From NCBI RefSeq assembly GCF_001447785.1, contig NW_015164188.1, positions 588,472 through 652,471 of the forward strand: a stretch of 64,000 nt of DNA, written 5' to 3'. Below the pieces are notes generated by a model. It was not told the DNA's origin, ran no database searches, and saw only the letters and a program-made list of their open reading frames with translations. Shown here in pieces: positions 1-54,363 of the stretch (position 1 is its first letter; every line of letters begins with the position of its first letter). This DNA comes from Gekko japonicus (lineage: Eukaryota). The position numbers and the translations under genes were made by a program.

Positions 1-814
1 GAATAGAAATGCCTCAGGTAGTAACTTTTGTATTTTTGTGGCTGTTTTTTCCCACTCTTTCACTTTCCTCCTGTGTCCGTGAATTTTTATCTGCCACCTG
101 AACAGGGGTGGACAGTGGGCTGCTACCCTGGAGGAGGGATTGGGGGCCAGGAACAAAGTGAGCCAAGTGGCCCTCCACGTGGCACTGGCGGGGCCATTTG
201 GCTTGGACACGAGCTATGGAGGCAATGACAACCAGCTTGCTCCAGGGCTGCTGGAGCATCCAGACCTGGATCTGGAGGGAAATACTGAACAGGCTAGGAA
301 GAAGCCTGAGACCCTCCTCAGAAAGGGGCTGAAGGAACTGAAACACGATGGACAGAGCAGACACTCACATAACAGGAATGGGTGTGTGTAGATTCCCAGC
401 CCAAAGGAACATGTTTTTGTATGGAAGGCTTAATTTTAGAGCCTTTCTTTCTTATGTCTATGTGATCATCCACAGGATCAGGTTCAAAGAGGAAGTGAGA
501 GAGGGAGAGAGCTGGGTCAGATTGCAGTCCCTGGCAGGGTTAAGCAAATCCCCTGTCTTAAATGCCACTCACCTCCTGGCATGCATACATATGACAATAC
601 TTTCAGCCTGTTACAGTAAAATCTAGATGGAGTCTTGGGACGCCTTTAAAGTCTGATGTCTGTACATGCCTGTCTCAGACAATTATGAAGGCTTGTTAAG
701 TTATAATTTCTAGAGTTTTATAAACTAGTGGATGGTGTGGAGAAAATGAAGGGATTTTATTGTGCCTTTGGGTCACCTGTAGTGAACTTTGGGTCACCCG
801 TAACGAACTTGATT

Positions 815-1120
815 AGCAATAGGTTCAAGACAGCCAAAAGTAAGCACTGCATTAGATATTACATGATCAGTTCATGAAATTAGCTACTACAATGTGACAG
901 CCACTGATTTAGAAGACTTTAACAGGATTAGACAGATACATGGAGGTGGAGAGGTCTATTGGTGGTTATTAGCTCTGATGGCTAAACAGAACCTCCATGT
1001 TCAGAGGCATTAGACCTCTGAATGCCATTTACTGGAGGCATCTCTGTGTGGTGGCTTTTGTCTTCATGCCTTGCTGGTCAGCTTCCCTAAAGCATCTTGC
1101 TGTCCACTGTGGGAAATAAG
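815..1120 (+). mobile_element. Degenerate CR1 LINE 3' region (mirror copy at ~1647..1952 on minus)
   Basis: Contains GGATTAGACAGATACATGGAGG...GAACCTCCATGTTCAGAGGCA...CCACTGTGGGAAA, typical of squamate CR1 3' ends; similar to the CR1 tail at 44545..44712. Confidence 0.7.
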
Positions 1121-1646
1121 GGCCGAGTTCAGACTGGCAGTTTGCCCCGATATAGGCATGTTTCAGAAACATTCCACAACCAAATTAAAGGGGCCGTTCA
1201 CACAGGCACATCTGTCAGGCATTCACCACCCAAACTCAACCTGTCTTGTAACCCTTTGGTCCCGAGTTTAAAAGATACCTGGTGAAAGTGGTAGCAAACC
1301 GTGGAAAGCGCAATTATCCCGTGTCCATTCCACACCAACAAAGTGTGAATGCCAAAAGCCACGTTTTTCTTATGCGCTTATGCGCATAAGCGCATAAGAA
1401 AAACGTGGCTTTTGGCATTCACACTTTGTTGGTGTGGAATGGACACGGGATAATTGCGCTTTCCACGGTTTGCTACCACTTTCACCAGGTATCTTTTAAA
1501 CTCGGGACCAAAGGGTTACAAGACAGGTTGAGTTTGGGTGGTGAATGCCTGACAGATGTGCCTGTGTGAACGGCCCCTTTAATTTGGTTGTGGAATGTTT
1601 CTGAAACATGCCTATATCGGGGCAAACTGCCAGTCTGAACTCGGCC
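1121..1646. mobile_element. PIF/Harbinger-type MITE left half folded back on itself (core of the palindrome)
   Basis: TIR GGCCGAGTTCAGACTGGCAGT. The first ~180 bp are collinear with the intact family member at 43789..44433. Confidence 0.8.
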
Positions 1647-3328
1647 CTTATTTCCCACAGTGGACAGCAAGATGCTTTAGGGAAGCTGACCAGCAAGGCA
1701 TGAAGACAAAAGCCACCACACAGAGATGCCTCCAGTAAATGGCATTCAGAGGTCTAATGCCTCTGAACATGGAGGTTCTGTTTAGCCATCAGAGCTAATA
1801 ACCACCAATAGACCTCTCCACCTCCATGTATCTGTCTAATCCTGTTAAAGTCTTCTAAATCAGTGGCTGTCACATTGTAGTAGCTAATTTCATGAACTGA
1901 TCATGTAATATCTAATGCAGTGCTTACTTTTGGCTGTCTTGAACCTATTGCTAATCAAGTTCGTTACGGGTGACCCAAAGTTCACTACAGGTGACCCAAA
2001 GTTCTAGTTGTAAGGCACAATAAAATCCCTTCATTTTCTCCACACCATCCACTAGTTTATAAAACTCTAGAAATTATAACTTAACAAGCCTTCATAATTG
2101 TCTGAGACAGGCATGTACAGACATCAGACTTTAAAGGCGTCCCAAGACTCCATCTAGATTTTGCTGTAACAGGCTGAAAGTATTGTCATATGTATGCATG
2201 CCAGGAGGTGAGTGGCATTTAAGACAGGGGATTTGCTTAACCCTGCCAGGGACTGCAATCTGACCCAGCTCTCTCCCTCTCTCACTTCCTCTTTGAACCT
2301 GATCCTGTGGATGATCACATAGACATTAGAAAGAAAGGCTCTAAAATTAAGCCTGCCATACATAAACATGTTCCTTTGGGCTGGGAATCTACACACACCC
2401 ATTCCTGTTATGTGAGTGTCTGCTCTGTCCATCGTGTTTCAGTTCCTTCAGCCCCTTTCTGAGGAGGGTCTCAGGCTTCTTCCTAGCCTGTTCAGTATTT
2501 CCCTCCAGATCCAGGTCTGGATGCTCCAGCAGCCCTGGAGCAAGCTGGTTGTCATTGCCTCCATAGCTCGTGTCCAAGCCAAATGGCCCCGCCAGTGCCA
2601 CGTGGAGGGCCACTTGGCTCACTTTGTTCCTGGACCCCAATGCCTCCTCCAGGGTAGCAGCCTACTGTCCACCCCTGTTCAGGTGGCAGAGAAAAATACA
2701 CGGACACAGGAGGAAAGTGAAACAGTGGGACAAAACAGCCACGAAAATACAAAAGTTACTACCTGAGGCATTTCTATTCAGACTTGAGTACAGTGACCAC
2801 TCACAGCGGTGATGACCAGCAATAACAGTCCTCCTAGCTAGTTAGCAGCAGTTGCCACTGCTGTGAATGGTCACGTGAAGTTCATGAAACAGATCTTGCT
2901 TTCTTTTGGCAGCACTTGAATTGCTTAAAAAAAACTCCTCTGAAGGGCCAGGGAACACTGGGGCAAGAATGGGACACAGCACTGCAGGGGAATCAGAAGA
3001 AATGAATCAGGAGCTGTTCCTCAACTGGAGCAAGAGCCTGCATGAGAATGGGGAAGGGAGATTTCTGTTCATTCCTCCTTGCCGCAGCCACCTATGTGGC
3101 ATCCTACTCTATTCCCAGAGGTCTCCCAGGCCTTGAGAGCAGCTTTTCAGGGTGCACAGAAGGCTGCAAGAGAAAAGAAAGATATCTGTTCCATGAGTTT
3201 TTTTCTGTTCCCAATTCATTGGCCCCAACTCTGTGACTTCTGCATTTTATGACCCTTTGCTCCCAACTGTTTACACACTGGAAATTTCTATAACCACATA
3301 TATCTGCCAATTGAAAATAACCATTCAT

Positions 3329-3400
3329 GCATCTGATGAAGTGGGCTCTAGTCCATGAAAGCTAATGCCATAATAAATCTGTAACATTTTAAGATGCCAA
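3329..3400 (+). ncRNA. Penelope-like element pLTR remnant with minimal type I hammerhead ribozyme motif
   Basis: GCAT-CTGATGA-A-GTGGGC-TCTA-GTCCAT-GAAA-GC-TA-ATGC, followed by AATAAA...TTTAAGATGCCA, the PLE terminus pattern. Confidence 0.7.
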
Positions 3401-4815
3401 AACTTTTTTTGCCTAGTGAGTTAGTTTATTGTCTGAGCTGAGATCAAGAGGGATTTAATTGGAATTCAAAGGCTTTCATTTGGATGAATCACACCATGGT
3501 CCTTTAATTGCATTCTTGATTTATGTAATCCGCAGTTTAAATCTGTTAGTCAAGAAGTACTCTTATTAATGATTAGCAATAAATATTGTTTATTTTATAC
3601 CATATGTAATATATTTGTAATAAATATCTGTTTTGGTGATGAACATCTGGGACCTTTTGCAAGGTCAAGGGTGATCTATGAGTGTTTCAAATACATTTTG
3701 ATATTGCTGTTTGAGCACTGGCCATTTATTTTTTTGAGCAGGATTTTTCTGTGCCTACCCGTGCCACACTTCAGGCCTTAGTCTTTGACCTTCATTGCAT
3801 TGACAGACAAGACAAACATTTTTGTTCAATTCTCAGAAACTCTCCAGTGAATTACAGTAATCTGCCTTGTAGCACCCTGGGGGGAAGAGTAACTTTTATT
3901 ACTGACCTCTACAGGATAATATCCTTCATACAGAGGCAATGGCAAAATAAAAGGAAAGAATTATGCACCTTAAACTGGTAGGAAACTTCTATATAGTGTG
4001 GAGACCAGATGATGTGCAAAGAACAAGCAGGGATTTTGAATTAGCTCGGAAAAATATGGTCTGTCGAAAGAAAGGGCTAATGGCTAAATCTGTAGTAAAA
4101 GGTCATAAAGTCCTAACCAAGAAAGGATTTGTCCCCAGTATCTATAATTCAGAGGAATATGTGTAAATCTTGGTCCTTAAGATAACACAGACTTGATAGT
4201 TTAAATGAAATAAATATTGCTTTATTAAAGCAAGGCATAGATAAGAAATCAATAAAATGCCTAACCATACTAAATGTATGCTGTATGCTAATTTGCTGCT
4301 CATTCTTTACCTCTGGCTGTGGTTACATGAGCCGTTTGGGCTGCTATCGTTGCAGTACCTTTGCGGGTTTAAAGAGCACAATCAGGCAGCAACATCTGCC
4401 TTCCGTGCCCCAGTCATAGCCACCCTTTTCTGCCCCATTTTGGAAGCAGAGTAATCAGGCACTGGGGAAATACTGATGTTTATAGAGATCAGTGCTTTCA
4501 CCTCATCTTTCCAGAACTCCCCTGGTACGAGCTCAACTCGGTTGGGAAGTCTGATCGCTCTGTTCCGTTTTCACTCCTTTTCGTTTTTTAGTCAGTTAGC
4601 AATGTGCGCATAATTTCCCACCACCAGTACGTTTTTGGCTTGGAGGTGCAGCTCAGACGCTTTAACTGTGTAAAGGAAATAAACCAGTTTAAATACCCTA
4701 TGTAAACAGCTGGAAAGTTTGATTCTTCAGTGGAAAAGTTGTTTTTTCTTGGAAGATTGCTGGCTTTGATGCAAACTAGCACTTGACTGAGTTATTTGAA
4801 CAGAGTGCCTAGCTG

Positions 4816-6908
4816 GATTCAATGGATTATTTTTTGCCTTTTGCCCTGCCTTTGTGGACTGCTTTTGCTTTCTTTTTGGATATCTCTTTAATGGATCTGG
4901 TTACTGGAATAACAAATAACATCTCACCTTGGTAGAGTCCTTTTGAATGCTCAAGGGATTGGGACTTTCCCGTTGAAGAGAAATAACTTTTGTGAATCTG
5001 TATGCTATATTTTGTGTTCCTATAAACTGGGAAAAAATTGGAACCCCAAGAAGAAGATAAAGAACTTGGAAACATAATTTCCTCTGTGTGGTTTTACAAT
5101 TTATATTTTCTGGATATACAATTTATATTTTTGGAGCATAAAAGCTTCTTGGAATTACAGGTAACATTTATTGGAGAGTTATGATTGGTACATTGTGGAA
5201 ATCTTTAAAAGCTATTGGAAATATAATTCCCTCCTTGTGGATTTACAACCTATACCTTGTGTCTATACCTGGAACTCTATAGAACATTTAGTGAAAGCCT
5301 AAAATTTGTGCAGTGTGGAACTGTAGAACATTGATATTTGAACTGAGAACACTTGACATTTTGCATAAAGCTGTTGGTAAGGTGAGAGAGTGTTAAAAAA
5401 GATACGGGGGAAGCTTTCAGTTGGCCTGTGTTTACATTATATTGTGCTTATTGTGGGAACTAAACGACTGGAATTGCCTGAAGTATGGAGTGATATTGTT
5501 TAGACTGCCTAAGTATTATTAATAATAATAAAATAAGGAAAAGCTGTGGACGTGTTTGAAAATCAGTATTGCGGTTAAATTGTTTTGGAACATTGGGAAC
5601 ATTGGAAGTCCCTTGAAGTATTATTGAAACAATTTGTGTGTGTGCTGGCACTGACAAAGGGAAAAGGGGGAGGGAGGTCTTGGGAACTGTTAGTTTAAAT
5701 GAAAAATGTCTTCTGGTTCAGCTAGACCCTCGCCAAATGTAACAAAATAAGTAACCCAAAACCCAGCTAATCAAGAACTGCAGGCCATGATCAAAGATGC
5801 TGTAAATAAAGCAATAGGAAATACAATTCCACAGGCCATAAGCAATGCACTACCAAGATTCAATGGATTATTTTTTGCCTTTTGCCCTGCCTTTGTGGAC
5901 TGCTTTTGCTTTCTTTTTGGATATCTCTTTAATGGATCTGGTTACTGGAATAACAAATAACATCTCACCTTGGTAGAGTCCTTTTGAATGCTCAAGGGAT
6001 TGGGACTTTCCCGTTGAAGAGAAATAACTTTTGTGAATCTGTATGCTATATTTTGTGTTCCTATAAACTGGGAAAAAATTGGAACCCCAAGAAGAAGATA
6101 AAGAACTTGGAAACATAATTTCCTCTGTGTGGTTTTACAATTTATATTTTCTGGATATACAATTTATATTTTTGGAGCATAAAAGCTTCTTGGAATTACA
6201 GGTAACATTTATTGGAGACTTATGATTGGTACATTGTGGAAATCTTTAAAAGCTATTGGAAATATAATTCCCTCCTTGTGGATTTACAACCTATACCTTG
6301 TGTCTATACCTGGAACTCTATAGAACATTTAGTGAAAGCCTAAAATTTGTGCAGTGTGGAACTATAGAACACTGATATTTGAATTGAGAACACTTGACAT
6401 TTTGCATAAAGCTGTTGGTAAGGCGAGAGAGCGTTAAAAATAAAGAGGGGGGAAGCTTTCAGTTGGCCTGTGTTCACATTGCAGTGTGCTTATTGTGGGA
6501 ACTAAATGACTGGGATTGCCCTCTCTGAAGTATAGAGTGATATTGTTTGGACTGCCTAAGTATTAATAATAATAAAATAAGGAAAAGCTGTGGACATGTT
6601 TGAAAATCAGTATTGCGGTTAAATTGTTTGGGAACATTGGAAGACTCTTGAAGTATTATTGAAACAATTTGTGTATGTGTTGGCACTGACAAAGGGAAAA
6701 GAGGAGAGGAGGAGGGTCTTGGGAACTAACTGTGAGTTTAAATTAAAAATGTCTTCTGGTTCAGCTAGACCCTCACCAAATGTAACAAAATCATTAACCC
6801 AAAACCCAGGTAAGATGCCAAATCAAGAACTGCAGGCCATGATCAAAGATGCTGTAAATAAAGCAATAGGAAATACAATTCCACAGACCATAAAGAATGC
6901 ACTACCAA
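4816..6908 (+). repeat. Tandem duplication (period 1041 bp) of L1 5'UTR plus ORF1 start
   Basis: Copy A 4816..5856 and copy B 5857..6908 both begin GATTCAATGGATTATTTTTTGCC and end GCACTACCAA. Identical 82-aa antisense ORFs at 4827 and 5868. Confidence 0.95.
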
Positions 6909-7708
6909 TTGTGATTGAACCCCTTCAAGCAAGATTTGATGCTTTGGTGTTACAAGTGACATCTCAAACCCAGGAATACAAACAACAGATCCTGGAAAAT
7001 ACTCAACAAATTACCACATTAAAACAGACTACTATCCAGCTGCAGGATAAGTCTGAAGAGACAGACCAAAGATTTCAAATTATGGAAGCCAAACAAGATC
7101 TTCTAGAAGATTCTTTATTTAGGCTAGAATTGGACAAAGCTTCTTATATGTTGAGGTTCCAGAACATCCCAGAAGATAAAGATGAAGATGTAAAAGAAAA
7201 AATAATTAAAATATTGGCAACATACTTGAAAGAAGAGAGTACTCAGGATATCTCGGATGAGATAGACATGGCCTATAGAATGAATTCAGCATATGCAAAA
7301 AGAAATAAAGTGCCCAGAGAGATTCATATGAGATTCCACACAAAGGTCATGAGAGACACCATCTTAAAAACTACAAGCAAAAAGACACTTTATGTGCAAG
7401 AGACAGAAATCCCAATTTTGAAGGAGATTCCATGGAGAGTAAGAGAAAAGAGAAGAAGCTACTCCCAATTTACAAGACTATTTAGAGAAAATGGAATAAG
7501 ATATAGATGGCTGCTCCCTGAAGACATTTTCTTCATCTTTGAAGGTAAAAGATACAGAATAAAATTGATATTTAAAATGGAAGATTTCCTTAAAAAAAAC
7601 ATGAAGAAGATCTTGGAGCCAAAGAAGAAGAAGAGGGAGAAGAGGAGCAAGATGAAGAGGAGGGAAGGTGTGAAGGAGAAGGAGAAGATCAACAGGATAA
7701 AGGTATAA
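6749..7708 (+). CDS. L1 ORF1p-like RNA-binding protein (coiled coil + RRM + CTD); C-terminus probably frameshifted
   Basis: ATG at 6749 within the 349-aa ORF. A heptad-rich segment precedes LRFQNIPED...IDMAYR...PREIHMRF...ILK...GIRYRWLLP, the L1 ORF1 pattern. Lies directly upstream of ORF2. Confidence 0.85.
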   Translation: MSSGSARPSPNVTKSLTQNPGKMPNQELQAMIKDAVNKAIGNTIPQTIKNALPIVIEPLQARFDALVLQVTSQTQEYKQQILENTQQITTLKQTTIQLQDKSEETDQRFQIMEAKQDLLEDSLFRLELDKASYMLRFQNIPEDKDEDVKEKIIKILATYLKEESTQDISDEIDMAYRMNSAYAKRNKVPREIHMRFHTKVMRDTILKTTSKKTLYVQETEIPILKEIPWRVREKRRSYSQFTRLFRENGIRYRWLLPEDIFFIFEGKRYRIKLIFKMEDFLKKNMKKILEPKKKKREKRSKMKRREGVKEKEKINRIKV

Positions 7709-7822
7709 CAGGGCCCAAAACAGGGAGGATGAAGAAAAAAGGTAAGGAAATACCATGTGTCATAGTAACAAGACTGCAAGAAAAGAATAGAACTGGAATC
7801 AAGAACAAAAAAGAGGTAAAAG

Positions 7823-10800
7823 ATGGATAGGAAGAAGATAAAAATAATTTCAATCAATGTTAATGGATTGAATCCTCCACAAAAAAGAAAACAAATATTC
7901 CAACAAATTAAGAAGATGCAAGTGGATGTAGTCTGCTTACAAGAAACTCATATTAAATATTCAGATAAAAAGTATTTAGAAGCAAAAAATTGGAAAATTT
8001 TGGATCAGCGAACAGACAAAAGAAAAAGAGAGGAGTTGCTACTTATGTAAAAGAACATTTACATCCAGAATTGGTGTATGAATCAGAAGATGGAAGACTG
8101 GTGATAGTTAAAATACAAAGACAAGCTAAAACTATGATTGTGTATGATATGGCATGGATATCAACTAATATGGTAAATGATATCATAGAAGTAGAAATTT
8201 TCCCTTTGATATACGCAAATCAACATCCCCTACTTTTGACTCTACAGGATACACCAAGAAAAATAGATGGACAATGAATTTATGGCTATTAAAAGATGCA
8301 GAATTTATTACCAGATCTAAAGAAGAATTTCAAGAATTTTTTAAAGCAAATACCCAAGCAGAGATTTCTAAAGACATAATTTGGGATGCCTATAAAGCAT
8401 ATGTGAGAAGGGTGAAAAGAAAAAAGGAAACAGAAATTTACCCAGATTGAAGAACAAATCAAACAAGAAGAGCAAAAGATGCATTCTGAACCCTCAATAA
8501 ATAGAACATACAAGATTAAAGATTAAAAATTTACAACACCAACTCAACTGCATGTTAACACAAGAAATTGCAAAGAAAATAACGTTTGCAAAACAAAATT
8601 ATTTTGAAAATGTTAATAAACCTACTAGGCATACAAATTGCGGAAACAAGCAGATAAGAAACACATAAAATACTAAAAAAATGAAAATGGTGAAGATAAA
8701 AATATCTATAAAGAAATAAAGACTATAGTAGAAGGGTTTTATAGTACTCTGTACCAAGAAGGAAGCTCCAGCCAAGATCAGATTAGAGACTTTCTACAGA
8801 AATTTAACAAAAAAGAATTTACAGAAGATCAAAGGAAAACATTAAATGACCCAATTTCCTTTTCAGAAATAATTCAGGCTATTAAAAAAAAGAAGAACTC
8901 CAGGCCCAGATGGTTTACCTGCAGAATTTTACCAGATATTTGAGGATCAAATTGTACTACCTCTGAAAAATACCATTCAAAATATATTTGAACAAAAGAA
9001 GCTACCAGAGTCCTGGAATCAAGCACTAATTACTTTAATACACAAGGCTGATACAGATGAAAGTGAAATTAAAAATTACCAACCAATTTCACTTCTGAAT
9101 GTAGATTATAAAATTTATGCATCTATCTTGGCAAGCAGACTGAAAAGGGTTTTATCTAAAATAATCCACCAGGATCAATCAGGTTTTTTGCCAAAGAGAC
9201 AAATGAGAAATAATGTGAGAACCATTCTGAATGTGTTAGAATATTTTGAAACACATCCTGAAAAGCAAATGGCATTATTATTTCTATATGCGGAACTGGT
9301 CTTTTATGTTGGAACAATAGGTGGCCTGGAACTGTGGAGAATACTTTTATGCCATGGTGAGAGCAATATACACATCACAAACAGCAAGAATTATAGTAAA
9401 TGGTGATCTCACACAAAATATTAAAATTGAAAAAGGAACAAGACAAGGATGCCCATTATCCTCGCTTTTAATTATTTTTACACTGGAAACATTAAACAAC
9501 ATGATTAGAGAAGATGGCAAAATCAGGGGAGTATAAACTACAAGGTGAGGAGTATAAACTACAAGCATTTGCTGATGACTTAGTATTTATATTAGAAGAA
9601 CTCCAAAATTCAATAGTTCAACTTCTACAAGTAATAAAAGAATATGGACAGTATGCTGGCTTGAAAATAAAACTTAAAAAAAAAACTATTGCTAAAAATT
9701 GTACCAAAGGACAAGAGCAAGATATACAAAATACTTCAGGAATGGAAGTACAGAAAAAAATTAAATACTTAGGAATAATAATAGCTAATAAATGCAGCTC
9801 GTTGTACAAAGACAACTATACGAAGGATCTAGAAAACTGCAAACATTTGCAACTATCATTTATGGGAAGAATAGCAACAGTCAAGATGAACATTTTACCC
9901 AGATTGATCTTCCTATTTCAGACAATTCCAATTATAAAAGAGCAAAAATACTTCAAAGAGCTAGAAAAACTGATAAGACAATTCATCTGGGAAGGTAAAG
10001 AACCAAGAATTAAGTTTAAAATATTACAAGATTCCAAGGAAAGAGGAGGATTTACACTATCTGATTGGCAACTGTATTATAAAGTGGCAGTTCTTACATG
10101 GGTAAAGGATTGGATTACATTGGAAGATATGAGACTGTTAAAGCTGGAAGGACATGATTTAATGCTGGGCTGGCATGCTTTTGTTTGGAACCAAAAAAGT
10201 GGTAACCACAAGTATTTCTAGTAACATGTTCTGAGAGCAGCATTAATTAAGGAATGGGAGCAAGTTCAGAAATTGTATTATAATAAGATACCAAAATGGG
10301 TCTCCCCATTAGAAGCCTTTACAAATCCAATGACATTTACAAAGCAAAAGTTGTGGAGATATCAAGACTTTTTAGATAGCCAACACAAATTAATTCAGCA
10401 AGAAAAGCTAAAAGAAAAAGGTATCAACCTGAACTGGTGGGAAAGAGCACAAATAGATTATAGATATGTGAAAGATAAAATGATGGGATTTTGTGATTGT
10501 TCTGGTCCTGGGGTACCGGGACTTAACCCACACACCCCAGGAACCCCAATGACCACCAACTCACCCAGTAGACCCACAGACTGAGAAGACCTCGCAACGC
10601 CAGACCCTGTCAGCACAGCTGAGGCACAACAGTCCGGACCAGTCTGACCGTGAAACGAAGAGTCTCAAGGAGCAGCAGGAGAGGCCAATGGGACCAGGGA
10701 GAGGCTGACAGTGAACACACAAACACATGAGACCCCGCATGCCTGGACAGTGTTGGAGCTTATCATGGGGGGCGGGGCTGGGAGGAATGAGAGGAGAGAG

Positions 10801-11837
10801 AGGCGGGAATGGGAGACAGTGCTGGGAGAGGGAGCTGGGTATAAAGGAGAGGGAAGTGAAGGGGCCAGGGAGGAAGGACATGCTTGGAATTACCTGATGC
10901 AGGCAGAAAGAGAAGGAGTCCAGGGAGGACACTGAGAAGCTGGGGAACCGATGCACAGAGGTAGAGGGACTTACGGAGTGTCATCAAACTCCGTCTCCTA
11001 CCCATCTGAGGCCCCAACGCTCCCCCTCTTCTTTAACAGGTCTCAACTTCCAGAGCTGTCGGACCTCCCCCACCTTGAGTTGTCACGGCCATGGGAGGGT
11101 CCACGCCCGGAGCCCAGGGTGGGCTTGACAGTGATGTACCTGTAGAAATAGATAAAATTTTGTGGTGTGTTGAAGGGAAATATATAAAATTATTTTATAA
11201 GTTGTTATTAGAGACAAAAATGCAGGATGAGGTAGTAAAAGAAGCAATGATTAAATGGGCACAAAACATAGGTCATAACATACAACTAGAACAATGGGAA
11301 AAGGTATGGAAAGTTAACATAAAGCTCTCTAAAGCTGTGTCTTATAAAGAAAATATATACAAAATGTTTTATAGATGGCATATGACACCTGAAAACTTAG
11401 CTAAATGGTACCCAAGTATGTCAAATGTATGTCGGAAATGTAAATGAAAAACTGGCTCTTTTTACCATATGTGGTGGACATGTAATGTTGTTTAAAAAAT
11501 ATTGGATATGGAGACATGAGATAGTACAAAAAATACTTGATGCAAATGTACCATTCATACCAGAATTGTTTTATTAAATATTGTCCCACAACATTTTAAT
11601 ATACAAGATGTATATGAGATTATACAAATTGTAACTACAGCTAGAATTTTATATGCAAAATATTGGAAAAAAGAAGAGACACCGACAAAGGAACAACTAA
11701 TTTTCTGGCTGTTAGATGCAGCAGAAATGGACAAATTAACTTTACAATTACATGAAAAACAAGAAGGGAACTTTGAAAGAAAATGGGCGAGATTTTATAA
11801 TTGGATGCAAAATTATCCTGGAGAACTCAAATCATGA
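7823..11837 (+). pseudogene. L1 ORF2 (APE endonuclease, reverse transcriptase, C-terminal Cys-rich domain), disrupted
   Basis: Motifs IISINVNGLN, VCLQETH, YQPISLLNVDYKI, IHQDQSGF, GTRQGCPLS, AFADD, IKYLGI, CRKC...HMWWTC. Many frameshifts and stops; the GDFN part of the endonuclease is deleted near 8140; LTR insertion at 10498. Confidence 0.93.
10498..11130. mobile_element. Solo LTR (633 bp) inserted in L1 ORF2
   Basis: TGT...ACA termini and 5-bp TSD GTGAT (10493..10497, 11131..11135). Removing it rejoins ORF2 as MMGFCD-VPVEIDKIL. TATAAA-like motif near 10840. GC-rich island within AT-rich L1. Confidence 0.88.
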
Positions 11838-12507
11838 ATCTCAACAAAAACCTTATAGACACGGCGTAGAAGACTTAGAGTCTATAATTACATTGTAACT
11901 AAAGCTGATGTATGAGTATAGTATCCATTTTGTTAGATGTTTTCTATTCTGTTTCTTATGTCTTTTCGTTTTTCTGTAGTATCTTTCTACGAAACTAATA
12001 AAAACTGTTTATATAAAAAAGCAATGTGTGCATAATTGCATCTTCATGCACACCAGGAAGCTTTCAGCTGACCTCTAAGGTGAGAAGGGGGGAGGGGAGG
12101 GCAGATTGAGACACCTTCTTTGTCTTTCCTAATGCCGGTTCTTCTGCCTACAGCTTTGCAGCACACAGGGTCAGGAACGGGTTAATTGAAAAGATGAGTT
12201 TTTTCAGAGGGGGAGGCAGGTTCCTCCATCTGTCAAAACACGTTTCAAATAAGCGGTTATGCACATATGCAGAAGACAAATTTTTAAAAAGAAGCCACCC
12301 GACCACCCATTCCATGGTTGCTGTGCAGCAATAATCTTAATGGTTGACCATGGAGTGACCACGCAGTGAGGCCAGTTCAGGGTGGAATGTATGATTAAAA
12401 CTCTTTGTTACCAACTGCAACTGAGTACATAGAGCCAGGGCCAGACCCTGCCAACCCTGCAGTCTGACCACAGCCTATATATATGGACTGGTAACGTCAA
12501 TTTCAAT

Positions 12508-34970: not shown

Positions 34971-36788
34971 CGCAATAATAACCTTCTGTTAACATTCACA
35001 GCCCCACTGCAGAATTCAGAATGCTATGGTGCTTGATTTTTGTTCTCTTCAGATAGCACGAAACAAAAATGCCTTCAGGCTCCAATTGAGTCACTCAGGT
35101 TTCACACTTTCTTAACTGGACAGTATTGAAGAAAACAGATGCAGACAGTGAACCTTTGGAGAGATCATGTGGAAAGCTTGTTTGACATGTGTATGATTTG
35201 AGCACAACATCAAGGTGAGCTGGCAAGGGTCTCAACTCATGTGTAAAACAAGAAGTTTGATCACGGCAGGTTTGAATGTCAATCACATTTTTGCAAGTTT
35301 GCAGCAGCCCTGATATCACAGGCTATCAGATGGAGAAATACTGTACAACACAATCCATTTAGTCCATGGATATCAGAAGGAGGGGAGGAAGCAGATGAGG
35401 ATTCTTCTCTGAAATTTTTTTTGGGTCTGACTACAATATCTAAGGAGGGGAAATGAATTGACTCGTTTCATTTATTACTTTCTTCAGGAGCAGCAATCTA
35501 TTATTAATAGGCGTATGGTTTTGTTTGATAAATTAGTTGGAATTGGTTTCAAACTCAATAGATGTCAACCTCTTCTTAGAATTCGATTTTAAAACAACAC
35601 AGAACCTGTTTTAATGAAGTATGTGATCCTTTTAATATTGCCATGAATGATGCTGGTCTAATGAATAAAGAACCAATACTGTTGTCTCCTTCCAGATTGG
35701 TACTTACTGGAAAAGTTCTCTGTTTAAAATTCATAGATGTAAAGCCTTCACTTATTACAGGAGACTGCAATTTTTTTTAAAAAAAAATACAATATTAAAT
35801 GTAGCATAAATGAAATTAATATAGTGTTACTTTCCTTTATCTTGGCTTCAGGAAATAAGACTGTGGCTTCATCACAGATCAATGCAAAGGCACTTGCTAA
35901 ATCATTGATAAAATAAGATTATTTGATAAGAAAGTTTTGTGTGATAAATTGGTTGGAACTGGCTTCAGCCTTAATTGGTGTCATATGATATTGGTGAGGC
36001 TATAGTCAGATCCCCTGGAGTGTGATATAGCTCTAAAAAGCCACCATGGTGGTGGTGGGGGAGCAGGGGAGCTTTACCTCTTCTCTCCAAGCTAGAGTTG
36101 CCAACTTCCAGGTGGCACCTGGAAATCTCCTGCTATTACAGTTGATCTCCACATGAGCAAGATCATTGCCCCTAGGAGAAAATGGCTGCTTTGGACAGGG
36201 GACTCAGTGGCATCATGTCCTGCTGAGATCCCTCAGCTCCCCATATATCCTGCACTCCCCAGGCTCCACCCCCAAAGTCTCCAGGTATTTCCCAACCCAG
36301 AGCTGGCAACACTACTCCAAGCTATTTCTCTCATTGGAAATACAGCTCACCAGGCAACTTTTAGGAAGCAAAAAGAGACAGGCCCAGTACCATTCTTTTG
36401 CTTTTCTTCCGGGAGCTTTAAATAATCAATCAAGACATTTCTGATCATGGAACTGGCATAAGGAGATGAGTTTGGGGGGAAGGAAGACATACTTCCCTAG
36501 TGTTGCAGCCGTGATCAGTATCACACACACACATCTCATGGTTACATTTTGCAGCTGAACAGTGAAATCCTAAAGATACTTCAGTTGTCTTAGAAAGGTA
36601 TAACTCTGCTTGAGGTCACACTGTAAATTACTTATTTGGGGAACTGACAATAGATTGCTAGTATTACAGTGACCCATGAAGCTGCCTTATATTGAATCAG
36701 ATCATCAGTCCATCAAAGTCAAGTCCTGTCTACTGAGACTCGCAGTGGCTGTCCAGTGTCCCTGGCAGTGGTCTTTCACATCATCCTA

Positions 36789-37071
36789 GGCTGATTTTGC
36801 ACTAGAGCTGCCTCGATGTTGCGCCGCCGTTTGCCCTGATACTATTGGTCAATTTCACACCCGAAGCCGCAGGGCTGCATTTGACCCGCGGCTTTGCCTG
36901 ATTTCCTCCGCAGTTTCGTGATCCTCAAGAAACAAGATCACGAAACTGCGGGGGAAATCGGGCGAAGCCGCGAGTCAAAATGCAGCCCCGCAGCTTCGGG
37001 TGCAATACTGACCAATAGTATCGGGGCAAACAGTGGCGCAACATCGAGGCAGCTCTAGTGCAAAATCAGCC
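36789..37071. mobile_element. Fold-back (hairpin) PIF/Harbinger-type MITE, 283 bp
   Basis: GGCTGATTTTGCACTAGAGCTGCCTCGATGTTGCGCC has its perfect reverse complement at the other end, and complementarity continues to a ~12-nt loop. TSD CTA. Confidence 0.92.
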
Positions 37072-37386
37072 CTAGTTTTAGCTCTGTGGTTCAGTCCAGT
37101 TGGGGGTCTAATATACATAGGATTAACAAAAATGAGCTAGATCTGGAATTATATCGGTGGTAAGTCCTGGGGCAGTTTTGGACTGTCTTTGCCTGCAAAG
37201 TTTGACTCAGTTTCTCCCATTAAGGTTATCCCTCAGAATGTGGCTGGCTGGTCTAATAATGGTGACGAATATTACTTGTGCCCAGTTCTTGCCACGAAGT
37301 TTGGGTTACTTCATTTGATTTTCTTGCTTCTCCTGCTTACGCAACAATATGCATTACCAGCTATTGTGTGTGTGAGTGTAAGGTGT

Positions 37387-37770
37387 ATGGTGACCGTGAC
37401 CCCATAACGTTGTCTAGGCAAGTGATTAAGCAGATGTGGTTTGCCATTGTGTTCCTCTGCAAAGTCTACCTTGGTGGTCTCTAGGGTTGCCAGTTCCAGT
37501 TTGGGAAATACCTGGAGACTTTGGTGTTGAAGCCCAAGGAGAGTGGGATTTGGAGAGGGCAGGGACTTCAATGGGGTATGATGCCATAGAGTCTACCTTC
37601 CAAAGCACCATTTTCTCCAGGTGAACTGACCTCTATCACCTGGAGACCAGTGGTAATCCCAAGAGATCTCCAGCTATCACCTGGCAGTTGACAACCCTGA
37701 CTGATCTCCCATCCAAGTACCAACTCTGCTTAACTTCTGATATCTGATGAGATCGGGCTATACTATACCA
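37387..37770 (-). mobile_element. 5S-derived SINE interrupted by a family B MITE (~37482..37699)
   Basis: TCTCCCATCCAAGTAC...CTGCTTAACTTCTGATATCTGATGAGATCGGGCTA is the antisense 5S internal control region. Confidence 0.72.
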
Positions 37771-42174: not shown

Positions 42175-42640
42175 GGTTGTGTTCAGACTGGCAGTTTGGC
42201 CTGATATAGGCACATTTTACAAACGGAGTAAACAGGCAGGATCACACAGCCACATCTGTCAGGCGTTCCCCGGGCATACTCACCCCATCAGGGGTTGACT
42301 TGGAGCCGGGTTAAAAAGCCACCACCTCCGAAGTGGTGTTTTTGTTTCCCCGCGCATTCATTGCACATGGCCAGATGTCTGAACACGGGGGAGCGTGCAC
42401 AGAATGGATTTGGCAGTGTGAACCTGCAGATCCGTTCTGCCGCTATGTATGCGGTTTTTTAAAAGACTTACCTATGTGCGCATGCGTGTGCATCCGCACT
42501 ATGTACACACATGGTGTTTGGATATTTTTTTTTTGCAGTTTGCTCCGTGGCTGAGGCACCACAATAATATGGAGGCTTTACCATGGGATGTCTCCGTGGG
42601 TAACCCACAGCAGGGTGTGCTATGTGGCTGATATATCCCA
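42175..42640 (+). mobile_element. Partial Harbinger-type MITE, same family as 1121 and 43789
   Basis: Left end GGTTGTGTTCAGACTGGCAGTTTGGCCTGATATAGGCAC; right TIR not evident. Confidence 0.65.
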
Positions 42641-43788: not shown

Positions 43789-44433
43789 GGCCGAGTTCAA
43801 ACTGGCAGTTTGGCCCGATATAGGCACGTTTCACAAACGGATTAAAGGGGCCAGTTCACACAGGCACAGCTGTCAGGCGTTCCCCAGCCATACTCAACCC
43901 GTCCTATGATGCTTCCTTCCCGAGTTTAAAAAGTACCAGGTGAAAGTGGTAGCAAACCCTGGAGAGTGCGTTGATCCTGCTTCCTGGATGTGTGCACGCT
44001 AAACGCTAAAAGCCAGGAACAACCCGCATTGATAATGTGAACCGGCTGATCCCGTAGGGATGTGCATAAGGTGCAGTTGATTGCCTTGGAGAGGCAGCAG
44101 TGATATGACCGGATGTGCGCTGCTCTACCGCCCGATGCAGGGCGGGTGTGGGTGCAACATGATCCTGCCCCAATTCCTGATGCGCCTATGCACCCATGTG
44201 CCCATGCACTTATGTGCCTATGCGCATAGGCGCATGTCGCCGGAGTGAAAAACAGCCGCTTACAGCCACGCCTCCGCCAGGGGTGGGCCCAGTGAAAATG
44301 CTCCCTTGCACCTCCTCCCTGGTATGCTCCCGCATCAGTCGGTGCAGTGTGACCGGGAATACCCGGAACAAGTTGTCCCGGGTCTTTTTGCCACGACCCC
44401 CTCGTACTTCATACTGCCAGTCTGAACTCAGCC
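43789..44433. mobile_element. Intact PIF/Harbinger-type MITE (645 bp)
   Basis: TIR GGCCGAGTTCAAACTGGCAGT...ACTGCCAGTCTGAACTCAGCC; TSD TAT; internal palindrome GCCTATGCGCATAGGC at 44216..44231. Confidence 0.85.
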
Positions 44434-47029: not shown

Positions 47030-47427
47030 CAGGGCTTTTTTTTGTAGAAAAAGTCCAGCAGGAACGCATTAGCATAATAGGCCACACCCAGCAGCATAAA
47101 CTCATTAGCATATTAGGCCACACCCCTGACTGCACCACTCATTAGCATATTAGGCCGCATTCCCATGTTACCAGAAGTGTGGTCATCCAGCCACACCCAC
47201 CTTTTGCTTCTTATTCTGTTTACCTTGTTTGTTGTCAAAACCCAGGGCCTTTTTTTGTTGCAGGAACTCCTTTGCATGTTAGGCCACACACCCCTAATGT
47301 AGCCAATTCTAATGAGTTCCTGCTGTTGGGTGTGGCCTATTATGCTAATGAGTTCCTGCTGGGTGTGGCCAACTTGGGAGCCAGCCGGAACTCCGTTCCT
47401 GTGCGTTCCTGCCCAAAAATAGCCCTG
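47030..47427. mobile_element. hAT-type MITE family C, composite, nested in the TIR of a family B MITE
   Basis: CAGGGCT...AGCCCTG; TSD GGTTTACC; a second internal CAGGGCCTTTTTTTG end at ~47243; repeated CTCATTAGCATA and CCACACCC. Confidence 0.8.
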
Positions 47428-54030: not shown

Positions 54031-54363
54031 ATGAATCCACAAGGGTTAAGCTGACACTAAATATAATACAGGTACAAAATGTATTCAGGTGTACACATTT
54101 TTTAAAAACTTAGACCCATTAAAAATATTCACATTCAGACAAGAAAAATTTCTCAACACTCATACATAGATGGGTTGTCAACACTCATACATAGATGGGT
54201 TCTCAACGCTCATACATAGATGGGTTATGTATGAGTGTTGAGAAGTTTTTCATGTCTGAATGTGAATATTTTTAATGGGTCTAAGTTTTTTAAAAATGTG
54301 TACACCTGAATAAATTTTGTACCTGTATTATATTTAGTGTCAGCTTAACCCTTGTGGATTCAT
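54031..54363. repeat. 333-bp AT-rich palindrome with three 25-bp tandem units at the apex
   Basis: Arms 54031..54168 and 54226..54363 (ATGAATCCACAAGGGTTAAG...CTTAACCCTTGTGGATTCAT). Unit TCTCAACACTCATACATAGATGGGT x3 at 54151..54225. Confidence 0.95.

What the first reader, a model, noticed from the sequence alone, without database searches (positions are those of the whole stretch)
1..2779. Multi-kb spacer-less palindrome whose apex is a MITE's own internal hairpin
Seen: 1..1383 is mirrored by 1384..2779 with no spacer. The centre (1121..1646) is the left half of a Harbinger-type MITE doubled back on itself. The intact relative at 43789..44433 is asymmetric but carries an internal hairpin, ATGTGCCTATGCGCATAGGCGCAT (44212..44235), built from the same 8-bp unit as the apex here (TTATGCGCTTATGCGCATAAGCGCATAA). 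The MITE's right half and the rest of the host CR1 tail are missing. Established: short inverted repeats next to a break seed large palindromes by fold-back priming, and perfect palindromes are unstable. Inference: this MITE family may carry a built-in seed for fold-back inverted duplications of flanking DNA.
Basis: partly seen in the sequence, partly recalled or inferred. Interest (0 to 1): 0.8.

Follow-up and report, generated by a model that had tools for sequence, protein, structure and literature searches.

The report
Likely fold-back assembly artefact at MITE
The 2.8-kb mirror-image repeat is really written in this assembly, but its left half looks like an error-laden extra copy that other animals of the species lack, so it is most likely a sequencing or assembly fold-back artefact started at a short natural palindrome inside a transposon.

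Summary
Bases 1-1383 mirror 1384-2779 with no spacer, and the centre lies in the left half of a Harbinger-like MITE. The mirror is not perfect: the inner 618 bp are identical, and the outer arms differ by 12 substitutions and a 13-bp indel.

The biological reading is not supported.
- **Error signature:** at 9 of the 12 mismatches the left-arm base copies a neighbouring base and lengthens a homopolymer. The right arm does so at 1 of 12. Eight mismatches lie in the first 146 bases. So the left arm looks like a degraded copy of the right arm, not a diverged paralogue.
- **Deep run X1:** one unbranched contig runs from the right arm into the flank at flank depth, and nothing is laid on 1-800.
- **Three shallow raw-read runs:** none places a read on 1-400, against about 11 on the mirror stretch. 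Pooled depth over both arms fits one copy, not two.

Arms that differ, yet a duplicate missing from four other data sets, fits neither an old nor a young real palindrome.

Most likely (about 0.8) this is a fold-back chimeric read or assembly artefact seeded at a natural palindrome of about 26 bp. The source animal's reads were not available, so a private real event remains possible (about 0.1). The scan has noted other spacer-less palindromes in this genome; none has been followed up.

The parts
1..1383 (.). Left arm: the probably spurious, lower-quality inverted copy of 1384-2779. It is cut by the window edge.
   Evidence: mirror of the right arm; 9 of 12 mismatches are homopolymer-lengthening in this arm only; no contig of X1 on 1-800; no raw reads on 1-400 in X12, X13 or X15.
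1384..2779 (.). Right arm: the genuine single-copy sequence, continuous with the flank from 2780 onward.
   Evidence: X1 contig record 2 (1588 nt, depth 81.1) covers 1762-3348 unbranched. Flank contigs have depth 62-98. X1 agrees with this arm at 11 of the 12 arm mismatches and at the 13-bp indel.
1371..1396 (.). Inferred natural 26-bp perfect palindrome of this MITE copy or subfamily. The fold-back axis is at 1383/1384.
   Evidence: sequence and motif. table 7: an X1 contig fits up to 1396 and then continues with 13 unrelated letters. It may come from a sister copy of the MITE.
1121..1383 (+). Left half of a Harbinger-like MITE (terminal inverted repeat GGCCGAGTTCAGACTGGCAGT, preceded by TAA).
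   Evidence: about 80% identity to 43789-44000; read pile-ups and loose ends at 1121 show a high-copy family.
1384..1646 (-). Mirror copy of the same MITE left half.
   Evidence: 100% complementary; loose ends at 1646, 1609, 1507 and 1464 mirror those at 1121, 1158, 1260 and 1303.
2002..2014 (.). 13 bp present in the right arm only, absent from the left arm between 765 and 766, bounded by CTT on both sides.
   Evidence: X1 has the right-arm state (record 2 has one gap, the T put in behind 3197).
43789..44433 (+). Intact 645-bp relative of the MITE, with 21-nt terminal inverted repeats and TAT on both sides.
44212..44235 (.). 24-nt near-palindrome (one mismatch) inside the relative, within a run of degenerate 8-bp units.
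42181..42268 (-). Short fragment of the same MITE family.
   Evidence: two blastn hits at 93-94% identity.

Best explanation
The left arm (1-1383) is not part of the animal's genome. The true locus is the right arm. It reads from the flank (2780 onward) leftwards through unique DNA into a MITE, as far as a natural palindrome of about 26 bp (1371-1396). In the genome the MITE's other half should follow there.

Inferred mechanism: one or a few DNA molecules broken at or near that palindrome snapped back on themselves and were filled in during library preparation. Alternatively, reads or graph paths were turned back there. Either way this gave sequence that reads the locus forwards and then backwards. 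The assembler used the overhang to extend a contig end. The overhang rested on little data, so it kept consensus errors that grow more frequent towards the end of the piece.

Shown: the mirror structure, the direction-specific error signature, and the lack of the second copy in other individuals. Inferred: the artefact mechanism, and that window base 1 is a contig end.
For: - **Error signature.** At 9 of 12 arm mismatches the left-arm base repeats a neighbouring base, making runs of 2-6. The right-arm base does so at 1 of 12 (Fisher p = 0.003). A homopolymer smear on one arm only points to consensus error, not divergence.
- **Substitution spectrum.** The arm mismatches are 3 transitions and 9 transversions. 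Real variation at this locus (X1 against the window) is 9 and 3 (p = 0.04).
- **Position of mismatches.** 8 of 12 lie in bases 37-146 (P = 5e-6) and none in the inner 618 bp.
- **Deep run X1.** One unbranched contig crosses 2779/2780 at depth 81, the same as the flank contigs (62-98). Nothing is laid on 1-800. X1 has the right-arm state at 11 of 12 sites and at the indel.
- **Raw reads.** There are 0 read-equivalents on 1-400 against about 11 on 2401-2800. Pooled depth over both arms is 19.6 read-equivalents per kb, against 24 expected for one copy and 48 for two (P = 4e-6 for two).
- **Logic.** Arms that differ imply age, and age implies presence in other animals, which is not seen.
- **Published artefacts.** Fold-back artefact reads arising in library preparation are documented for ONT and PacBio (PMC12870357). 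Chimeras formed at natural palindromic sequences during end repair are also documented (PMC10908179).
- **Comparison with real events.** All 21 sequenced human fold-back inverted duplications had a spacer of 766 bp to 70 kb (PMC3907307). Here there is none.
Against: - The reads of the assembled animal were not among the runs on offer. The best holder shares only 0.66 of the sampled words and differs at 0.76%. A private or heterozygous real event is therefore not excluded.
- I could not establish that window base 1 is a contig end, nor which sequencing technology made this assembly.
- The mismatches are nearly all substitutions, whereas raw long-read errors are mostly indels.
- One left-arm allele (T at 617) is a real population allele, carried by X1 at 2163. 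Natural haplotypes here can also differ in dense clusters (7 sites in 2139-2231).
- The raw-read coverage is shallow, about 0.7x per run.
- If the palindrome runs on beyond the window edge, the flank used as the depth baseline would itself be duplicated.
Confidence: 0.8

Rival explanations
1. A real but young and private (perhaps heterozygous or somatic) fold-back inverted duplication in the sequenced animal. A break next to the MITE's 26-bp palindrome let the 3' end fold back and prime synthesis. The mismatches in the left arm would be ordinary contig-end errors plus heterozygous sites.
For: The axis lies exactly on a natural palindrome, as fold-back priming predicts. One left-arm allele is a genuine population allele. 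Absence from other individuals does not exclude a private event.
Against: A real palindrome would be covered equally on both arms, so a one-sided error signature 400-600 bases from the end (sites 417-453) is unexpected. There is no spacer, unlike all 21 sequenced human cases (PMC3907307). Long perfect palindromes are unstable in vertebrate cells (established knowledge; review PMC7999016, found by search but not read). None of the four other data sets shows it.
Confidence: 0.12
2. An old inverted duplication fixed in the species, whose arms are kept alike near the centre by gene conversion. That would explain the gradient of differences.
For: Identity is perfect in the inner 618 bp and falls outwards.
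Against: Left-arm-specific sequence is absent from X1 at about 80x word depth and from three raw runs. The region is single copy there. The differences are one-directional homopolymer smears and rich in transversions.
Confidence: 0.03
3. A mis-join of the two haplotypes of the sequenced animal. The alternative haplotype's copy of the arm was attached head-to-head at the palindrome, so the arm differences are heterozygous sites.
For: T at 617 is a real allele. The differences are mostly substitutions plus one microhomology-flanked indel, as between haplotypes.
Against: The transition-to-transversion ratio of 3:9 and the homopolymer-copying bias on one arm only are not what allelic variation looks like. 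A 26-bp overlap is too short for an assembler to join on. The inner 618 bp show no differences.
Confidence: 0.05

Closest known systems
Fold-back (duplicated inversion) artefact reads in long-read sequencing (Heinz, Meyerson and Li 2026, PMC12870357)
   Same: [quoted passage not shown] These reads arise in library preparation and are rare, so any overhang they add has low coverage.
   Different: Here the structure is seen in an assembly, not in a read. I could not inspect the source reads or confirm that long reads were used.
Library-preparation chimeras at natural palindromic or inverted-repeat sequences (PDSM model, PMC10908179)
   Same: The strand switch sits on a palindrome that is naturally present in the genome. 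The mechanism is intramolecular pairing of a single-stranded end followed by end repair.
   Different: It was described for short-read libraries and for read-length chimeras, not for a 1.4-kb mirrored arm.
Constitutional fold-back inverted duplications in humans (Hermetz et al. 2014, PMC3907307)
   Same: Inverted duplication with short inverted homology at the junction.
   Different: All 21 sequenced junctions there have a normal-copy spacer of 766 bp to 70 kb, and the duplications are large and next to terminal deletions. Here there is no spacer, and the second copy is absent from independent data.
Large palindromes seeded by short inverted repeats next to a break, in gene amplification (Tanaka and colleagues; recalled from memory, not read here)
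   Same: A short inverted repeat beside a break primes snap-back synthesis that copies flanking DNA.
   Different: Shown in cultured cells under selection. Nothing here shows amplification or selection.
PIF/Harbinger-type (Tourist-like) MITEs
   Same: Terminal inverted repeats of 21 nt, a 3-bp flanking duplication, size about 0.65 kb, and high copy number.
   Different: The relative's flanking triplet is TAT rather than the usual TAA or TTA. No transposase partner was sought.

Membership tests
Fold-back read / assembly artefact | Two arms mirror each other with no spacer | tested here: met
   0 nt between the arms; the inner 618 nt are 100% complementary.
Fold-back read / assembly artefact | The extra arm is of lower quality and carries consensus-type errors relative to the genuine arm | tested here: met
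   9 of 12 left-arm bases against 1 of 12 right-arm bases copy a neighbour (p = 0.003); 3 transitions to 9 transversions; 8 of 12 mismatches within 146 nt of the edge.
Fold-back read / assembly artefact | The extra arm is unsupported by independent sequence data and the region is single copy | tested here: met
   on four runs from three studies. All are other individuals, not the source animal.
Fold-back read / assembly artefact | It lies at the end of a contig | not testable with these tools
   The position of the window in its contig is not given. It is only inferred from errors piling up at bases 37-146.
Fold-back read / assembly artefact | In the source reads only symmetric chimeric reads cross the axis | not testable with these tools
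   No run of the source animal was offered.
Genuine fold-back inverted duplication | Both arms present in genomic DNA (doubled depth, arm-specific alleles seen) | tested here: not met
   pooled depth fits one copy (P = 4e-6 for two). No reads or contigs carry left-arm-specific sequence. Tested on other individuals only.
Genuine fold-back inverted duplication | Normal-copy spacer (the fold-back loop) between the arms | tested here: not met
   no spacer. PMC3907307 reports spacers in 21 of 21 cases.
Genuine fold-back inverted duplication | Short inverted homology at the junction | tested here: met
   the axis lies on a natural palindrome with a TATGCGCATA core, inferred to be 26 bp.
PIF/Harbinger-type MITE | Terminal inverted repeats | tested here: met
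   the 21-nt ends of 43789-44433 match with 2 mismatches; the left end is shared with 1121 onward.
PIF/Harbinger-type MITE | 3-bp target-site duplication, typically TAA or TTA | tested here: inconclusive
   TAT on both sides of the relative. TAA before 1121. table 7: the consensus of the family's flanks ends in TTA or ATA, but agreement is only about 0.4.
PIF/Harbinger-type MITE | Sequence relationship to an autonomous Harbinger transposon | not tested
   No repeat library was on hand.

The most novel reading that the evidence does not exclude
The sequenced gecko really carries, on one chromosome or in part of its cells, a spacer-less fold-back inverted duplication of at least 1.4 kb per arm. 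It would have been primed at the 26-bp palindrome of a MITE, so that members of this high-copy family act as hotspots for palindrome formation in a vertebrate germline.
Probability: 0.1. Interest if true: 0.55.

Novelty: not a real feature. Interest (0 to 1): 0.12.

Why it matters
As biology it probably does not matter. As quality control it does. The first 1383 bases of this window, and possibly more to the left, most likely should be trimmed from the assembly, and the MITE's other half and the rest of the locus belong there instead.

The case also gives a practical test for such structures without the source reads. Ask whether the differences between the arms are one-directional homopolymer smears. 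Then ask whether independent runs carry the extra arm's own alleles.

If the minority reading were true, it would be a rare germline example of a transposon-borne palindrome seeding a large inverted duplication.

Tried and rejected
- **The look-up of encoding contigs:** I tried to fetch Logan contigs holding small ORFs that span the apex (1349-1450) or the MITE/flank border (1595-1735).
- **The listing of cluster members:** the same ORFs plus a control ORF were all absent from the protein collection, control included, so the result says nothing.
- **Earlier notes of this scan:** they list other spacer-less palindromes in this genome (s1-818823, s1-833016), but none was followed up, so there is no pattern to lean on.
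- **Assembly technology:** I read the two published Gekko japonicus assemblies: Illumina SOAPdenovo with SSPACE (PMC4673495) and PacBio CLR with MECAT2, GCpp and Pilon (PMC10776941). I could not tell which, if either, the window comes from. Short tandem arrays only and 64 kb without N point in opposite directions.
- **Natural fold-back element (rejected):** the mirror runs 1120 bases beyond the MITE ends into unique DNA that is single copy in X1.
- **Old palindrome with gene conversion (rejected):** see the rival explanations.
- **Not tested:** the claim that the MITE sits in a CR1 tail. No repeat library was on hand, and there is no second copy in the window.
- **Apex-crossing reads:** these could not be seen directly. 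The tool reports only departures from the laid sequence, and the MITE attracts hundreds of reads from other copies.

Full report
**1. The observation**

The window does contain the palindrome. The centre lies between C1383 and G1384 and there is no spacer. Bases 766-1383 and 1384-2001 are perfectly complementary over 618 nt. Bases 1-765 and 2015-2779 are 98% complementary.

The arms differ by 12 substitutions, at left-arm positions 37, 49, 57, 82, 89, 117, 138, 146, 417, 425, 453 and 617. They also differ by 13 bp (2002-2014) that only the right arm has, bounded by CTT on both sides.

The right arm's end at 2779 is merely the mirror of window base 1, so the arm length is a lower bound.

No other inverted repeat in the 64 kb comes close. 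The natural hairpin-like elements have arms of 44-138 nt, spacers of 12-1167 nt and 77-97% identity.

**2. The transposon part**

Bases 1121-1383 match the left end of a 645-bp element at 43789-44433 at about 80% over the first ~215 bases. After that the two copies diverge.

The relative has 21-nt terminal inverted repeats and TAT on both sides. At the apex locus, TAA precedes the element.

Read pile-ups and sharp loose ends at 1121/1646, 1158/1609, 1260/1507 and 1303/1464 show a family of many copies.

The motif TATGCGCATA occurs without mismatch only twice in the window: at the apex (1379-1388) and in the relative (44219-44228). With one mismatch allowed there are 6 hits against 0.67 expected.

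The relative's 24-nt near-palindrome is real but folds no better than shuffles (z = -1.8).

The homology between the apex and 44212-44235 rests on the motif only.

**3. Is the left arm a diverged copy or a degraded copy?**

- At 9 of the 12 mismatches the left-arm base repeats an adjacent base and so lengthens a homopolymer (run length 1 becomes 2-6). The right-arm base does this at only 1 of 12 (Fisher p = 0.003).
- The mismatches are 3 transitions and 9 transversions. The 12 differences between run X1 and the window on the same stretch are 9 and 3 (p = 0.04).
- Eight of the 12 lie within bases 37-146 (P = 5e-6) and none in the inner 618 bp.
- The single clean exception, C/T at 617, is the one site where X1 carries the left-arm allele (A at 2163). 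It is a real polymorphism.

A one-sided homopolymer smear that thickens towards the edge is what a thinly covered consensus looks like. It is not what two copies evolving apart look like.

**4. Independent reads (one call allowed)**

*Run X1.* X1 consists of Logan contigs totalling about 2.46 Gb, with word depth around 80. The best listed holder shares only 0.66 of the sampled words and differs from the window at 0.76%, so it is another individual.

- One contig of 1588 nt covers 1762-3348. It crosses the arm/flank border without a branch at depth 81.1. Flank contigs have depth 62-98.
- A second contig, laid on 980-1147, is equally the mirror 1620-1787. It is probably the same path carried on into the MITE.
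- Nothing of X1 is laid on 1-800.
- X1 has the right-arm state at 11 of 12 sites and at the indel.

*Three raw-read runs.* X12, X13 and X15 come from two further studies, each sampled at roughly 0.7x.

- No read is placed on 1-400, against about 11 read-equivalents on 2401-2800.
- In the identical inner part, ties fall on both arms (801-1000 and 1801-2000). Their sum equals single-copy depth.
- Pooled, both arms together give 19.6 read-equivalents per kb. One copy predicts 24 and two copies predict 48 (P = 4e-6 for two copies).

*Caveats.*

- These are not the source animal's reads.
- Coverage is shallow.
- If the palindrome continued beyond the window edge, the flank baseline would itself be doubled. 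Even then, depth is nearer the single-copy value expected from the letters read and a 2.5-Gb genome.
- The genome size rests on earlier notes that name the species Gekko japonicus and on PMC10776941.

**5. The natural state of the apex**

An X1 contig fits up to 1396, 13 bases past the centre, and then continues with 13 letters unlike the mirror (table 7). This suggests that the natural element has a 26-bp perfect palindrome (1371-1396) followed by different sequence.

About four of five reads and most contigs at 1404 carry T rather than C. The apex-near sequence therefore exists in several copies, and this contig cannot be tied to this locus.

**6. Explanation**

- An old real palindrome is contradicted: differing arms need time, and an old duplication would be seen in the other animals.
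- A young real palindrome predicts identical, equally covered arms. It is not contradicted outright, because contig ends carry errors anyway and a private event would be missing elsewhere.
- The best fit is a fold-back artefact. Library preparation is known to produce fold-back molecules in ONT and PacBio data (PMC12870357). It is also known to produce chimeras located exactly at natural palindromic sequences, through self-pairing and end repair (PMC10908179).
- A palindrome-prone site can yield several such molecules with overhangs of different length. That would explain a consensus that is clean near the axis and poorer outwards.
- Real constitutional fold-back duplications had a spacer of 766 bp to 70 kb in all 21 sequenced cases (PMC3907307). 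Here there is none.

I put the artefact at about 0.8, a private real event at about 0.1, and the rest on a haplotype mis-join or an old palindrome.

**7. What remains unexplained**

- The residual differences are almost all substitutions, whereas raw long-read errors are mainly indels. A dropped base plus an over-called neighbouring run would look like such a substitution, but I did not show this.
- The 13-bp indel may be an allele or an error.
- I could not learn the assembly's technology or the window's place in its contig.

**8. Verdict**

The biological interpretation is not supported, except that the axis does sit on the MITE's own palindrome. The feature is most likely not real.

The scan has noted other spacer-less palindromes in this genome on other pieces (s1-818823, s1-833016). 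They have not been checked and deserve the same test.

Noticed in passing
window 2139-2231: Run X1 differs from the window at 7 sites within 93 bases (6 transitions, 1 transversion). Real haplotypes at this locus can differ in dense clusters.
   Followed up: partly
window 4809-5108 and 5850-6149: A direct repeat of at least 300 nt at 99% identity, spaced 1041 nt start to start. It looks like about 1.3 copies of a 1-kb unit or the terminal repeats of a small element. X1 also shows a 36-base skip at 5261-5298.
   Followed up: no
window 54031-54363: Inverted repeat with 138-nt arms at 97% and a 57-nt spacer that overlaps a 25-bp tandem array (54150-54226). This looks like a natural fold-back or MITE-type element.
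   Followed up: no
window 36789-37071 and 36247-37549: Nested inverted repeats: 94-nt arms at 90%, 44-nt arms at 91% with a 12-nt spacer, and outer 68-nt arms at 79%. Probably a composite transposon.
   Followed up: no
window 47055-47362: 57-nt inverted arms at 91%, built from a 36-37-bp tandem unit (47056-47156).
   Followed up: no
window 6001-12000: Strong strand asymmetry (AT skew 0.18-0.26) and low G+C (0.31-0.40), as for a long A-rich retroelement read on one strand.
   Followed up: no
window 1121 and 1646 (reads of the whole family): The consensus of the flanks of the family's many copies ends in CACTTA just outside the terminal repeat, with about 0.4 agreement. Either TTA is the usual target duplication, or part of the family sits inside a larger repeat.
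   Followed up: no
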